Below are positions 12,840 through 38,570 of a stretch of DNA of 64,000 bases, piece after piece (within the stretch, counting starts at the first letter, position 1; each line of letters starts with the position of its first letter). Origin of the DNA: Diadema antillarum (taxonomy: Eukaryota); contig NW_027270960.1 in NCBI RefSeq assembly GCF_040938485.1, positions 1,984,001-2,048,000 of the forward strand. The letters run 5' to 3'. Made by a program: the position numbers and the translations under genes. Under the pieces are notes generated by a model. That model saw nothing but the letters and a program-made list of their open reading frames with translations. It did no database searches and was not told the origin of the DNA.

Positions 12840-12932
12840 TTAACATGTTGAAGGCGAGTCCCGAGAATACTCGGGCAGGTGTCTATGGGAAATGCATGTT
12901 ATAGCAAAATCAGTCCATCCTCATCGGGTTAA
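12840..12932 (+). mobile_element. 93-bp piggyBac-like MITE, copy 2
   Basis: Same body as 10590 (CCCGAGAATACTCGGGCAGGTGTCTATGGGAAATGCATG); TTAA at both ends; right TTAA shared with the next element. Confidence 0.8.
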
Positions 12933-13318
12933 AGGGATGGTATAGTATTGGTGGAGATGAGGATTGGGCTTTTAACTTTTTGCAAGATACCAAGAAAGCA
13001 CCTATGAAATAATATATAGCATATTATTCTGAGAGGTATTCAAAGTTTATTAGGTGAATATTGGTTTTGGTATGGCTGAGACATCCAAAAACAAAGTATA
13101 ACAAAGTGATCCTAATAAAAGGTGGGTTCCACCTTTTATTAGAATTGCTTTGTTTTGGATATCTCAACCATTTCAAAACCAACTTTCATCAAATAGACAT
13201 TGAATCCTTCCTGGAATTATATGCTCTTGAATATTTCATAAGAGGTTTCTTGTTATCTCACCAGAAAATGTTAGAAACCTGAAGTTAGGTCTCAACCACA
13301 ACTATACGATCCCTTTAA
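12929..13318. mobile_element. Kolobok/T2-like MITE, family A, copy 1
   Basis: TTAA|AGGGATGGTATAGT ... ACTATACGATCCCT|TTAA; body similar to 33268-33643; long imperfect internal IR. Confidence 0.8.
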
Positions 13319-29197: not shown

Positions 29198-29849
29198 TAG
29201 CCATGTTCAGACGTTATTTCTAGTCGGAGTAAAATTTATGGCGCAGCAATGAAAATTCAAATTTATACTTATCTTACCATGACCATGTGTCCACACGACG
29301 GTCGTGGGAAGAAACTCCGACCAATTTACCACGGCCTTCGCGAGGATCACCATGGAGGGTCGGTTTAACTTCCGGAAGTGGTAGCGCCGCGCACGTCGAC
29401 CATACGATTGTTTTTTACCGGCGGCATATTGTCTTCTCCATTCTTGTTGATGGAAATTTCTGAGTGCTAGGTTCTTCGTCGCGATCGACTAGGTTAGAAT
29501 TGCACTACACACGCACCTGTACTCACAAAATGTCAACATTGCGATTTGACCCCAGAAGTTTTACCTAGGTCGTAAGGTATGTAAGTTCAGAGATACTCCG
29601 AGGGCTTGTCCGCACGGGCAATTTACTCCGAGCGGCTAGTCGTGGTAGCGAGATACTCCTGAGAAAACTCAGGAGTATCTTGGTCGGAGAAAGAGGTCGT
29701 GGTAAGTTTCTCCGACTGGAGGAACTTACCACGACCTTGTTCAGACGGGCACTACTCCGACCTTTCCTCCGAAGTTACTTCGACACGCTTCCTCTGACCC
29801 TTCCTCCGAAGTTACTCTGACCAAAACTGCCCTCGTCTGAACATAGCTA
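29198..29849. mobile_element. PIF/Harbinger-like non-autonomous element (~650 bp)
   Basis: TAGCCATGTTCAGACG vs reverse complement of right end TAGCTATGTTCAGACG (15/16); many internal TACTCCGA/GTCGTGGTA motifs; TSD ambiguous. Confidence 0.75.
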
Positions 29850-29873: not shown

Positions 29874-29986
29874 GGGAACATACCGAATGTTCCACCTGAA
29901 GGATTTGAAATGCTATTGAGGGACTTAAATAGCCTCCCTCAATAGCATTTCAAACCCTGAGGTTGGAACGTTTGGTACATGTTCCC
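29874..29986. repeat. Foldback hairpin with ~50-bp arms
   Basis: Perfect 20-bp inner stem TTTGAAATGCTATTGAGGGA / TCCCTCAATAGCATTTCAAA, 11-nt loop, imperfect outer arms. Confidence 0.85.
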
Positions 29987-31604: not shown

Positions 31605-31714
31605 AAGTAATTTTTGCATTGTGATGCAAACAGCAATAAATCAGTGTAGGTGAACGAGACTTGTCTTCTTCAACCTTCAGACTCCCTTTACTGTGGTAAC
31701 TGTTCCTCATACCT

Positions 31715-31807
31715 TTAACCCATTGAAGACGAGTCCTGAGAATACTCAGGCATGTGCCTATAGGAAATGTGTGTTATAGTAAAATCAGTCTGTCCTCAAT
31801 GAGTTAA
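31715..31807 (+). mobile_element. 93-bp piggyBac-like MITE, copy 5
   Basis: TTAA|CCCATTGAAGACG ... GTCCTCAATGAG|TTAA. Confidence 0.8.
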
Positions 31808-33267
31808 GAGTCAATTCATTCTGGGCACATACATGCAGTTTCGTATTGAGGTAACTGGTTTTAAATGAGATCAGCGCATAATAGGCTCTTCAAGTTTTAC
31901 AGCGCATAACCAAAAACACTGCTCTGTTGAACACACTGTCAGTCTGTGCCTTAGAGGAGAAAGCAGGATGTACTATATATATAATATTGACATTTTTGTG
32001 GTAGTCTTATTGTAGGGAATTTTGTTAGTAGGCCCTTGATGGCAAGAATTACAACTTGTGAAAATGTTTACAAAATTGAAAAAAAAAATTGTCCCAACGA
32101 CAAGCACAGTCCCGCACCAGCACAATTAATGGATGCTGTATCAAGTGAGTACTATAAGCAGAGCCCCAATACCATGCTATTAGGACCTCTGCTCGAATCC
32201 TTCGAATACAAGCACTTCGAATACAAGCACTTTTTTTTTCTGAGTGATTCGATCTCATTTCAAGCAATGTTTCAACAAAACAGTTTGTTTGAGAATTCAC
32301 ACTTCCTTCTGAAAGTTTATGTCATCTTATTTTGCATGTGTGTGTGTGTGTGTGCAATTATCATGAATATAAGGAGACCACAATGTGTGAGATTAAGAAC
32401 TCAAGAAAAGTGTTTATCTACTGCCATTCGCAAAAAATATCTGCTCTCGAAAATATCGTGTACCTTTTGTGTTTGAAGACAAATGACCATTTAATAAGCA
32501 AATTAACAGCAGTGGGAAAATGATTCTTATCAATCTCAATTGAAAATACCATGATTTTAACAATTTTTCTGATAAATTATATTGTTTGAGCATTTCTGTC
32601 CCACAGCAATGGAACATTGCACCGTTATGGCATTCAAATAACATATATATATTGTTTGTTTGATGTGTTGTTTTTTTTCTTTTTGTCTTTTTGCTGCTGC
32701 TACTGCAGTAATTTTCTTGCACAATTGGATCACCAGTCTGCTGCCCACAACTGTGGCTGTGACGTAAACAGTAGCCTGGCTGGCCTGACTGCATGTTTCA
32801 TGTGTGGCCGCAGGGAGGACTGTGAATGTCCAGTGGACATCACATGACAATGACTCACTGTTCTTTCTGCAGTGATTGTTCTTATCCTTACCACAAATCA
32901 TTGCAGCAAAGCTGCATGCAAAGTTTTATTAAGAGAAATGTTGCGCTGACCTGGCCCGCGAATTCTCCAGCGATATGTTGGGTGGCTCGTGGGGCGCTGT
33001 TGCCTAGCGACTTTCACAAAAAGTGTTGGGATATTTCAAATGTAGCAATCATTCTCTGTCAGTTTGAATGGCCCTACTGTCATTATTCTTTTGCCTAAGG
33101 CACTATCTGTACAGGTTATTTGTCTCTATAGTGCCTCATTGTCCATACGTCTATGCATGCAATATTGCCATGTGCTTAAGAGTTTAATCACCTTTTTGAA
33201 GTGGTATGATACAGCAAGCTCAATGTTAGCAATGGTATTGAGCAAGCTGTAGCGATGGCCCTGAGAA

Positions 33268-33643
33268 TTAAAGGGATGGTATAGTATTGGTTGAGATGAG
33301 GATTTAGCTTTTAACTTTTTATGAGATACTTAGAAACTACTTTATCAATTGTTACAGAGCAAACAATTCTAAGAGGAATTCAAAGTTTATTTGCTGAAAA
33401 TCAGTTTTGAAATGGCTGAGATGTACAAAAACACGGTAAAACAAAGCAATCCTGATAGAATGTGGAACCCACCTCGCTTTGTTTTGGATATCTCATCCAT
33501 TTCAAAACTAATTTTCATACAGTGAACTTTGAATTCCTCTTAGAATTGTGTGCTTATTTATATCTTACAAGAGGTTTCTAAGTATTTCACAAAAAGTTAA
33601 AAGCTGAATCCTCATCTCAACCAATACTATACAATCCCTTTAA
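33268..33643. mobile_element. Kolobok/T2-like MITE, family A, copy 2
   Basis: TTAA|AGGGATGGTATAGTATTGGTTGAGATGAGG ... CCTCATCTCAACCAATACTATACAATCCCT|TTAA. Confidence 0.9.
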
Positions 33644-33719
33644 TTCTCAGGGCCATCACTTAAGCTTGCTCAATACCATTGCTATGTGTGAATAAAATCT
33701 CAGTTGAGAACCACCCTAC

Positions 33720-34241
33720 TTTATAGGGGAAATTTACCATGAAAATTAGTTTGTGTGAATAGAAACAGAAGAATTAGGACAGGACAATGAACGTTTAAGT
33801 AAATTCTGAGGAAAACTGAGACAGGTATGATCGGTTAAACACAAATTAGCAATTCTGTGATGTCACACACCAACTCATCCCCCAGTTTTAGCTGAGTTAT
33901 AGAAAATGAAATTTTCATTTTCCCACCTAGCAAATTTTCAATTGTACAGATACAATCATTGTGGATATTTTTCTGTACAACTCCTGCATGAATATATATA
34001 TTTCTTGATCAATAACTAAAAAGAGATATTTTATGGAATTTTATTCACAGAGCAAATGAAAGGTGAGCTTGCATGCTATATAACAGAGTTACCAATTTGT
34101 GCTTGATTGATCACAACATTGAATTAAAAAAATTATAACTTTTACTGTCCTGTTCCCTTCATTTTTCTGCTTTTATCCAAACAAACAGATTTTTAGAATG
34201 GTCCTTCCCATTTATGAGAAACAAAATGATACTGTGCCTTT
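33720..34241. mobile_element. Old degenerate TTAA|AGG-type MITE (only right end clear)
   Basis: Right end reads TTAAAGGCACAGTATC on the minus strand; imperfect internal IR around ACAGGACA/TGTCCTGT; left boundary uncertain. Confidence 0.3.
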
Positions 34242-35249
34242 AAATCAGATCAAAAGAAGCACAGTTTGTGGTTTCCCACCACTTGGCATTCATGTCAAAG
34301 GGGGGCAAAATTTCAGTTTTTGTTAAGTTTGTTGACATAAGTAGACTGGCAAAATTTGCAAAAAAAAAGAAAAAAAGAAAAGAAAAAGGAAGGCGAAGAT
34401 GCCACTATGGTCTATTCTCTGTGATTTACAATAACTTTGATATTTATTGTACATATGATACTGTAATATATTTTATATCAGCATATATTCTGACATTGTA
34501 AATAGTTGCATATCAAAAGGTAGTAGCTTTGAAAACTTCTAACCATTCACAATGACAGTATTATATAGTGATTGTTATCTGTAATGTTATCCTGTGACAT
34601 TAGTTTTCAATCTTAAGATTTTATCTAAACCCGAACAGAGTGAATTGTGGCCACTTCTGAATATGTGTAACTAGTGGTCAATGTTATCATCGGCATTTAG
34701 TTTTGATAATGTGATCCTCACTGAAGACATACGATATTGTAACCCACATGCCATCCACTTTAACTGTGGTACTGTTTCAGCTCAGTGTTGGTACCATTAG
34801 GAAAATAGGACGTGCGCATGCAACTCTCCATTGGAAATGGAAGGTAAAAGAGGGAAAAAGGTTTTTGTAGAGTTTTACATCCAAGTGTCTGAGTTTGATT
34901 ACCCAGCGGACGCCTGATTTTTGTTGCTCGGGGCAACAGGGCTACTGCTGTACATTACTTTCCTTGAATTCCAGCCCTTTTTTTTTCGTCGACTGGCGAT
35001 GTATCATTGGAGCTAGCATCAATATTACATGGAAATTCAAGCCCAGAAGCTGGCCGAATGCATGACATTGATGAAGTCTATGAATGTTTCATAATCTCTG
35101 ATAATATGCTTCTTGAAGAAAGTGTAATCCATACGATTAAAGTGACATGGCACACTTTATCTCAGGTTGCTATCATATCTGAAATCTCAGGTTCAGTCAC
35201 TCACATGTGTGCTAGTGCTTCATATTTTCTCTTAAACCTGGTGGTACAA

Positions 35250-38460: not shown

Positions 38461-38570
38461 ATGGTAAAACTATTTGACCTCGGTGATTTCTCAACAGTGC
38501 CATGTCCCTCGACTTCGTCTCGGGACATAGCACTGTTGAGAAATCACCTCGGTGCAAATAGTTTTACCAT
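38461..38570. repeat. 110-bp foldback (hairpin MITE-like)
   Basis: ATGGTAAAACTATTTG ... CAAATAGTTTTACCAT with ~48-bp arms, 4 differences, 13-nt loop. Confidence 0.85.

What the first reader, a model, noticed from the sequence alone, without database searches (positions are those of the whole stretch)
33227..33684. Second Kolobok-like MITE centred in an 86-bp palindrome
Outside the TTAA TSDs, the 41-bp flanks are reverse complements at 38/41 positions (TAGCAATGGTATTGAGCAAGC..GATGGCCCTGAGAA). The sister copy at 12929 lacks them. With 21584-22177, two of four clear TTAA|AGG elements, from different families, occupy palindrome centres, while none of the seven piggyBac-like copies do. The options are preferential insertion at cruciform tips, inverted flank duplication during hairpin-mediated repair, or nesting into a tiny hairpin element (TGT flanks both outer ends, possibly a 3-bp TSD). 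This is the best candidate for an undescribed mechanism in the window.
Basis: partly seen in the sequence, partly recalled or inferred. Interest (0 to 1): 0.75.

Follow-up and report, generated by a model that had tools for sequence, protein, structure and literature searches.

The report
MITE hairpin extended into its flank
An old small transposon that folds into a hairpin had its right tip and 41 bases of neighbouring DNA overwritten by an inverted copy of its left tip and left neighbour, most likely a known kind of copying error and not a new way of choosing insertion sites.

Summary
Window 33227-33342 and 33569-33684 form one 116-nt inverted repeat (92%): a 41-nt flank arm, TTAA, and about 70 nt of a Kolobok/T2-like MITE.

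What the arms are not:
- They occur only at this locus and its two near-identical duplicates, so they are neither a longer subfamily's TIRs nor a small hairpin element.
- 27 other copies end at TTAA and have random flanks.

What they most likely are:
- The family has different left and right ends. Here the right end is left-type out to MITE position ~66-72.
- All 17 of its best genome matches that I checked are left ends of ordinary copies.
- All three arm mismatches can be read as later changes, so the arms probably began perfect.
- The copying (~3.3% per lineage) is younger than the insertion (~9.4%).

Best reading (0.7): a post-insertional fold-back or template switch primed in the MITE's inner stem. 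It copied the left end, TTAA and 41 nt of left flank in inverted orientation. This is a known class of mutation.

The second element (21584-22177) differs. Four paralogous empty sites carry the intact 30-bp palindrome, so there the palindrome came first. 17 other copies of that family show no palindromic flanks, so the "two of four" pattern is a coincidence of two causes.

A targeted 86-bp palindrome that was later homogenised is not excluded (0.17).

The parts
33227..33267 (+). Left 41-nt arm: original, unique left flank of the MITE, and template of the copy
   Evidence: It is continuous with the unique left flank in this genome and in a related species' contig spanning 32950-33387. It is found only at this locus and its duplicates.
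33268..33271 (+). Left TTAA target-site duplication
   Evidence: The family boundary at TTAA|AGGG holds in more than 20 copies.
33272..33342 (+). Left (L-type) end of the MITE, the original end and template of the copy
   Evidence: It differs from the family's left-end consensus at 4 of 72 sites. Many other left ends match it at 92-97%.
33358..33554 (.). Inner stem and loop of the MITE hairpin (arms 33358-33430 and 33482-33554, 86%), the proposed fold-back priming stem
   Evidence: the repeat finder pair I2. The family consensus is self-complementary here.
33547..33568 (+). Cluster of substitutions just inside the inner switch point
   Evidence: 8 of 28 consensus positions (291-318) differ, against about 10% elsewhere in this copy and in other copies.
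33570..33578 (+). Inner switch interval (GTTTCT/AGAAAC block shared by both end types)
   Evidence: The last left-type diagnostic site is at MITE position ~66 and the first right-type site at ~74 (sequence).
33569..33639 (-). Right end of the MITE, replaced by an inverted copy of the left end
   Evidence: About 18 of 21 diagnostic sites are left-type. It is the only such copy among 21. All 17 of its best genome matches that I checked are left ends of canonical copies.
33640..33643 (.). Right TTAA, read here as a copy of the left TTAA and not the original duplication
   Evidence: It lies inside the continuous 116-nt inverted repeat. This reading is inferred.
33644..33684 (-). Right 41-nt arm: inverted copy of the left flank, ending in a non-homologous junction at 33684/33685
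   Evidence: It matches the left arm at 38/41 in the window and 39/41 in the C344 copy. The junction is confirmed by contigs from independent runs. There is no complementarity beyond it.
12929..13318 (+). Canonical sister copy (left-type and right-type ends, TTAA duplications, unrelated flanks)
21584..22177 (+). Second Kolobok-like MITE (family 2, 21597-22164 including TTAAs) in a pre-existing 13+4+13 palindrome of a host repeat
   Evidence: Empty palindromes at four paralogous host-repeat copies.

Best explanation
A ~390-bp Kolobok/T2-type MITE (TTAA target, AGGGA termini) inserted long ago with ordinary, different left and right ends. Like its relatives it folds into a long hairpin with a mismatched bubble near each tip. 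Much later, a DNA end or nascent strand that stopped in the right inner arm (around 33570-33578) folded back on the complementary left inner arm. It was then extended using the element's own left side as template. Synthesis ran outward through the left end (about 70 nt), the TTAA and 41 nt of unique left flank. It then rejoined the chromosome at 33685 without homology. The original right end, right TTAA and some right flank were overwritten. The result is a 116-nt inverted repeat, probably perfect at first, that crosses the transposon/flank boundary. Shown here: the arms are unique, the right end is left-type, identity is continuous across the boundary, the arms are younger than the insertion, and the structure is confirmed by independent data. 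Inferred: the priming geometry, whether the trigger was a replication template switch or fold-back repair of a break (possibly an abortive excision), and what was deleted.
For: (1) The inverted repeat is one continuous 116-nt block at 92%, with 3/41 mismatches in the flank part and 5/72 in the MITE part.
(2) Left and right ends differ at positions ~29-72 in the family consensus. Our right end carries the left-type state at about 18 of 21 diagnostic sites up to position ~66, then reverts. It is the only such copy among 21.
(3) A genome search with the right-end 114 nt gave 37 non-self hits. All 17 I could orient are left ends of canonical copies.
(4) The 41-nt arm is unique in 1.75 Gb apart from this locus's duplicates.
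(5) The arm mismatches can all be read as later changes. At 33250 a related species has the base that the right arm carries. 33662 differs between the window and the C344 copy. The third mismatch is a CpG transition.
(6) Arm-private changes are about 7.5 in 226 nt (3.3% per lineage). The unaffected MITE parts differ from consensus at 22/235 (9.4%), like the family mean of ~10%. A binomial test gives p about 0.006 that the two ages are equal.
(7) The insertion and left arm are present in a related species that is ~5.7% diverged in the flank, while no contig of that species covers the right arm at ~38x depth.
(8) 27 other copies have chance-level flank complementarity.
(9) The mechanism is documented: template switching perfects and expands inverted repeats (PMC5453318, PMC8794818, PMC13100816).
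Against: No empty or unrearranged allele was recovered, so the state before the event is inferred. The absence of the right arm in the related species is only a gap in short contigs. The left end is well conserved in the family (other left ends are 92-97% identical to ours). The MITE part alone therefore does not prove that the right end was copied from this copy's own left end; only continuity with the unique flank does. Only one derived change is shared by the two ends (a CpG site), where about 4 would be expected for a late event (P about 0.07). The 14-15 nt just inside the switch point pair poorly today, so the exact primer terminus is unclear. Some other family members have left-like sequence at both ends without flank repeats, so end symmetry by itself is not unique.
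Confidence: 0.7

Rival explanations
1. Palindrome targeting followed by homogenisation. A unique 86-bp palindrome with a central TTAA existed first. The MITE inserted exactly at its centre, as the family-2 element at 21584 did in a 30-bp palindrome. Later a classical quasi-palindrome correction or gene conversion between the two sides converted the right end to left-type and reset the arms.
For: The element at 21584-22177 did insert into a pre-existing palindrome centre. No TTAA among 1423 sampled has more than 6 nt of perfect palindromic extension, so that hit is unlikely by chance. Short-spacer near-palindromes of 77-97 bp exist in this window (29881-29977 and 38477-38553). A pre-existing outer stem would give the template switch a homology-guided return.
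Against: It needs three uncommon things: a unique long palindrome, an exact central hit, and a later conversion covering everything. The fold-back model needs one. Unreset arms should carry about 6-8 differences from before the species split; at most 1 is seen. The converted bubble region is not younger than the arms (4/44 against 4/73 mismatches). 27 and 17 other insertions show no palindromic flanks.
Confidence: 0.17
2. Inverted duplication of the flank made during the insertion itself, as aberrant transposition or gap repair at the staggered TTAA cut.
For: The arms abut the TTAA on both sides and probably began perfect.
Against: Repair at the insertion site would not turn the element's right end into a left-type end. 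Arm divergence (3.3% per lineage) is well below the copy's own divergence (9.4%). No other copy of either family shows it.
Confidence: 0.06
3. Nested insertion into a tiny mobile hairpin element (86 bp, TGT target duplication), or the arms are the true TIRs of a longer MITE subfamily.
For: TGT lies next to both outer ends. Small palindromes exist in the window.
Against: The arm has no other copy in the genome at up to 3 mismatches or by BLAST. All sampled family members end at TTAA. A 3-nt match is expected once in 64 by chance.
Confidence: 0.04
4. Assembly artefact, such as a fold-back chimera in long reads.
For: The locus has a 100%-identical inverted duplicate 6.8 Mb away on the same contig, so the assembly holds suspicious duplicates.
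Against: A 97.2%-identical copy on another contig has the same structure. Short-read contigs from three other samples and two organisms cross the right arm/flank junction.
Confidence: 0.01

Closest known systems
Short-range template-switch mutations / quasi-palindrome correction and inverted-repeat expansion (Ripley 1982 model; four-point model of Löytynoja & Goldman, PMC5453318; PMC8794818; PMC13100816)
   Same: A stretch is replaced by the reverse complement of nearby sequence. An imperfect inverted repeat becomes perfect and longer. The return to the original template needs no long homology. A single event looks like a cluster of changes.
   Different: This event is larger (116 nt copied). 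It was seeded by the long hairpin of a transposon and crossed the transposon boundary, so unique host DNA became part of the element's terminal inverted repeat. The ancestral state is inferred from the family consensus and not read from an outgroup alignment.
Fold-back (snap-back) repair of double-strand breaks next to inverted repeats, which gives inverted duplications and palindromes (my own knowledge of yeast and Tetrahymena palindrome formation and polymerase-theta snap-back synthesis; not checked in papers here)
   Same: A 3' end anneals within its own strand at an inverted repeat and is extended, giving an inverted copy that is then joined by end joining.
   Different: Those systems usually give either very short templated insertions or chromosome-scale palindromes. 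This is a local 116-nt tract. Whether a break occurred is not known.
Kolobok superfamily / T2-MITEs (TTAA target, terminal AGGRR; PMC6004289)
   Same: TTAA duplications, AGGGA...TCCCT termini, small non-coding palindromic elements in thousands of copies.
   Different: No transposase link was tested. The family-2 terminus AGGAC matches full-length Xenopus Kolobok termini listed in that paper but not the strict AGGRR motif.
Insertion of mobile elements into palindromic or hairpin targets (for example bacterial IS elements that target REP hairpins; my own knowledge)
   Same: The element at 21584-22177 lies at the exact centre of a palindrome that existed before it.
   Different: There is no family-wide preference: 0 of 17 and 0 of 27 other insertions. 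For the element under review the palindrome is best explained as a product and not a target.

Membership tests
Kolobok / T2-type MITE | TTAA target-site duplication | tested here: met
   TTAA on both sides in most of more than 25 family-1 copies and all 20 family-2 copies.
Kolobok / T2-type MITE | Terminal AGGRR motif in the TIR (PMC6004289) | tested here: met
   Family 1 has AGGGA...TCCCT. Family 2 has AGGAC, like full-length XKol A3 termini in PMC6004289 but not strictly RR at the fifth base.
Kolobok / T2-type MITE | Mobilised by a Kolobok transposase with matching termini | not tested
   I did not look for an autonomous partner.
Template-switch mutation (four-point model) | A tract equals the reverse complement of a nearby tract, with sharp ends | tested here: met
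   33569-33684 is the reverse complement of 33227-33342 at 92%, with no similarity beyond 33684 and a drop in similarity inside 33569.
Template-switch mutation (four-point model) | The tract replaced a different ancestral sequence | tested here: inconclusive
   This is supported indirectly. The canonical right-type end expected from 27 relatives is missing and left-type sequence stands in its place. No orthologous pre-event sequence was recovered; the related species shows only a gap.
Template-switch mutation (four-point model) | The event is a single mutation younger than the surrounding sequence | tested here: met
   3.3% per lineage since copying against 9.4% since insertion, p about 0.006. 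All three arm mismatches can be read as later changes.
Palindrome-targeted insertion | The empty site carries the complete palindrome | not testable with these tools
   For 33227-33684 there is no empty paralogue (the arms are unique) and no orthologous empty site was retrievable. For 21584-22177 the feature is met: four empty paralogues carry the intact 30-bp palindrome.
Palindrome-targeted insertion | Family-wide excess of complementary flanks | tested here: not met
   Family 1: 27 copies with 6-17 of 41 complementary (chance about 10). Family 2: 17 copies with 1-6 of 13 (chance about 3).
Nested insertion in a small hairpin transposon / longer-TIR subfamily | The arm sequence recurs at other loci | tested here: not met
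   It occurs only at this locus and its two duplicates.

The most novel reading that the evidence does not exclude
Kolobok-type MITE hairpins may repeatedly seed template switches that overshoot the element's end. That would homogenise the two ends and pull unique flanking DNA into the terminal inverted repeat, which would be a general route by which fold-back elements lengthen or renew their TIRs and create long hairpin loci. Separately, Kolobok transposases may have a weak preference for TTAA at extruded palindrome tips, as the 21584 case hints.
Probability: 0.15. Interest if true: 0.55.

Novelty: new member of a known kind. Interest (0 to 1): 0.3.

Why it matters
This locus is a clear, datable natural example of a template-switch or fold-back event seeded by a transposon hairpin. 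The event nearly doubled the predicted stem stability (-166.8 against -87.7 kcal/mol for a canonical copy). It also moved the edge of the inverted repeat 45 nt beyond the transposon. For annotation, it shows that inverted repeats outside a target-site duplication need not mean a longer element, a nested element or a palindromic target. For transposon biology, it shows one way that TIRs and long hairpins (possible small-RNA sources) can grow. It is a single neutral-looking event and the mechanism class is already described, so it does not open a new question.

Tried and rejected
- Longer-TIR subfamily: rejected. Family copies match only between the TTAAs.
- Tiny hairpin element: rejected. The arms are unique.
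- Whether the two ends are each other's closest relatives genome-wide: this failed as a test. Many other left ends are 92-97% identical to ours, so the MITE part alone cannot prove local copying.
- 'Shared private substitutions' between the two ends: two of three disappeared when the consensus was rebuilt from 27 copies. I do not use them.
- Pattern search for other copies with left-type sequence at both ends: it found three other loci. None has flank repeats. They look like a more symmetric subfamily, or separate homogenisation events, and this is unresolved.
- Orthologous empty site from public runs: only fragmentary contigs were available. The related species has the left junction but nothing over the right arm, which is suggestive and not decisive.
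- Whole-contig palindrome as an assembly artefact: rejected. The centre of symmetry of the 100% duplicate pair is not palindromic.
Later copies were fetched with the fetch from genomes.

Full report
**1. Observation**

The repeat finder reports one inverted repeat with arms 33227-33342 and 33569-33684, 116 nt at 92%. A second, inner pair lies at 33358-33430 and 33482-33554, 73 nt at 86%. The 41-nt arms outside the two TTAAs match at 38/41, and shuffled sequence gives no such match. The sister copy at 12929-13318 has TTAA on both sides and unrelated flanks. The important addition is that the high-identity repeat does not stop at the TTAA. It continues about 70 nt into the element.

**2. The element and its family**

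The window comes from a 1.75-Gb eukaryotic assembly. A search with the locus found thousands of first-look candidates. The scored copies match only between the two TTAAs. Extracted copies show TTAA|AGGGATGG...CCATCCCT|TTAA. This fits the Kolobok/T2-MITE signature of a TTAA target and terminal AGGRR (PMC6004289). Copies are about 10% from their consensus in every region.

**3. The arms are not a repeat family**

- At up to 3 mismatches the 41-mer occurs only at this locus and at two duplicates of it: C72 at 8.84 Mb, and C344.
- The 368-nt left flank is otherwise unique.
- The right flank is unique for about 30 nt and then enters an unrelated repeat from about 33720.
- This excludes a longer-TIR subfamily and a small hairpin transposon. 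The flanking TGT is a 3-nt coincidence.
- The C72 duplicate is 100% identical over 3.5 kb and inverted.
- The C344 copy is 97.2% identical, has the same structure, and shows a single difference inside the element, at 33662.

**4. The right end is a left end**

A consensus of 20 (later 27) other full-length copies shows that the two ends differ at positions ~29-72, while the terminal 28 nt and the interior from ~73 are complementary.

- In a four-way alignment, the reverse complement of our right end carries the left-type state at about 18 of 21 diagnostic sites up to position ~66. It shows right-type states from ~74.
- Of 21 copies, ours is the only one whose right end is closer to the left-type consensus than to the right-type one (0.83 against 0.72).
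- A genome search with the right-end 114 nt returned 37 non-self hits at 83-90%. All 17 I could orient are left ends of canonical copies.

The right-hand 116 nt is therefore an inverted image of [41-nt left flank + TTAA + left end]. The inner switch lies in 33570-33578, inside a GTTTCT/AGAAAC block common to both end types.

**5. A caveat I tested**

The left end is conserved in the family. Other left ends are 92-97% identical to ours, so the MITE part alone does not show that the copy was made from this very element. Two apparent shared private substitutions vanished with a broader consensus. The inference of local copying rests on continuity with the unique flank. A pattern search also found three other loci with left-like sequence at both ends. 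They have no flank repeats and carry a subfamily signature, so they may be a more symmetric lineage or separate homogenisation events.

**6. Timing**

Contigs of a related species (run X8, 18 differences in 318 nt of left flank) span 32950-33387. That covers the left flank, the left arm and the MITE, so the insertion predates that species split.

The three arm mismatches can all be polarised as later changes:
- At 33250 the related species has A, the base implied by the right arm, so the T in this genome's left arm is derived.
- 33662 differs between the window and the C344 copy.
- The third mismatch is a CpG transition.

The arms were therefore probably 41/41 at origin.

Changes private to one arm amount to about 7.5 in 226 nt, or 3.3% per lineage. 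That is close to the species split (2.85%). The unaffected parts of the MITE differ from consensus at 22/235, or 9.4%. A conditional binomial test of equal age gives p about 0.006. The copying is therefore post-insertional. Arms older than the insertion could not have stayed this similar without being reset.

No contig of the related species covers 33664-33697, although its left flank has ~38x depth. Runs of the same and a closer organism do cover that stretch at 4-7x. This suggests the event followed the split, but a gap in contigs proves nothing.

**7. Mechanism**

The canonical element folds as TIR stem, mismatched bubble, long inner stem, loop. A 3' end at the outer edge of the right inner stem can pair with the left inner stem and be extended. 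Extension would fill the bubble with left-type sequence, re-copy the TIR and TTAA, and overshoot 41 nt into the flank before rejoining at 33685.

This is the classical intra-strand template switch, or fold-back repair. It is known to perfect and to expand inverted repeats (PMC5453318; PMC8794818 and PMC13100816). A cluster of substitutions (8/28) just inside the switch point, at about 33547-33568, may be part of the same event. The predicted single-strand hairpin is -166.8 kcal/mol, against -87.7 for the sister copy with equally long flanks.

**8. The second element and the enrichment claim**

The element at 21584-22177 has perfect 13-nt arms outside its TTAAs. Its family (4506 first-look candidates; the scored copies ~97% identical to ours) ends at the TTAAs. 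The whole 681-nt locus recurs at least 15 times at 99-100%, so it sits in a host repeat.

The empty 30-bp palindrome occurs at four places. These are host-repeat paralogues, 90-96% identical over about 225-300 bp on each side. There the palindrome existed first.

- 17 other independent family-2 insertions have 1-6 of 13 complementary flank bases.
- 27 other family-1 insertions have 6-17 of 41.
- Among 1423 TTAA sites sampled, none has more than 6 nt of perfect palindromic extension.

The two palindromic cases in this window therefore have different causes, and there is no family-wide enrichment. The single hit in a rare 30-bp palindrome leaves a small possibility of weak structural targeting.

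**9. Verdict**

Targeting followed by later homogenisation remains possible (about 0.17), because no pre-event allele was recovered.

Noticed in passing
window 21300-22465; L060-L063: The family-2 MITE at 21597-22164 is nested in a host repeat. Filled copies recur at least 15 times at 99-100% over the 681-nt locus searched. Four older paralogues (90-96%) are empty and keep an intact 30-bp palindrome, TCTACAATCAGGC-TTAA-GCCTGATTGTAGA. So the host unit amplified recently, after it acquired the MITE. The identity and extent of the host repeat were not determined.
   Followed up: partly
window 31680-35230 and 21540-22220, against G000:C72 at 8.84-8.85 Mb: At least 12 kb of the window has a 100%-identical inverted duplicate 6.8 Mb away on the same 14.3-Mb contig (coordinates sum to a constant). 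The midpoint is not palindromic. This is either a very recent inverted segmental duplication or an assembly duplication. Many other loci also came back as near-identical pairs on different contigs (L007/L008, L009/L011, L014/L017, L021/L024, L026/L027), which suggests uncollapsed haplotypes.
   Followed up: partly
window 33547-33568: A dense cluster of mostly transition substitutions (8 of 28 consensus positions) lies just inside the inner switch point of the inverted copy. It could be error-prone synthesis tied to the event, or a second small templated patch.
   Followed up: no
L076 (G000:C30:6286788-6287166), L077, L078: Other family-1 copies have left-like sequence at both ends. In L076 the two ends share private variants and an inserted TA, and the right terminus is truncated. 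This may mean recurrent end-to-end homogenisation in this hairpin family, or a symmetric subfamily.
   Followed up: partly
window 29881-29977, 38477-38553, 29689-29742: Short-spacer near-palindromes (arms of 43, 37 and 25 nt at 84-88%, spacers of 3-11 nt) are unconnected to the TTAA elements. I did not check whether they are repeated hairpin elements or products of template switching.
   Followed up: no
window 33716-34002: Another dispersed repeat family (about 200 first-look candidates, 67-81% identity) begins about 30 nt to the right of the right arm.
   Followed up: no
window 23694-23733: The earlier-noted 'TIR-only micro-transposon' candidate is a 40-nt hairpin (TATAGTCAGGGAGGTGCTATAGCACCTCCCTGGTATAG). 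It is unrelated in sequence to either palindrome studied here.
   Followed up: no
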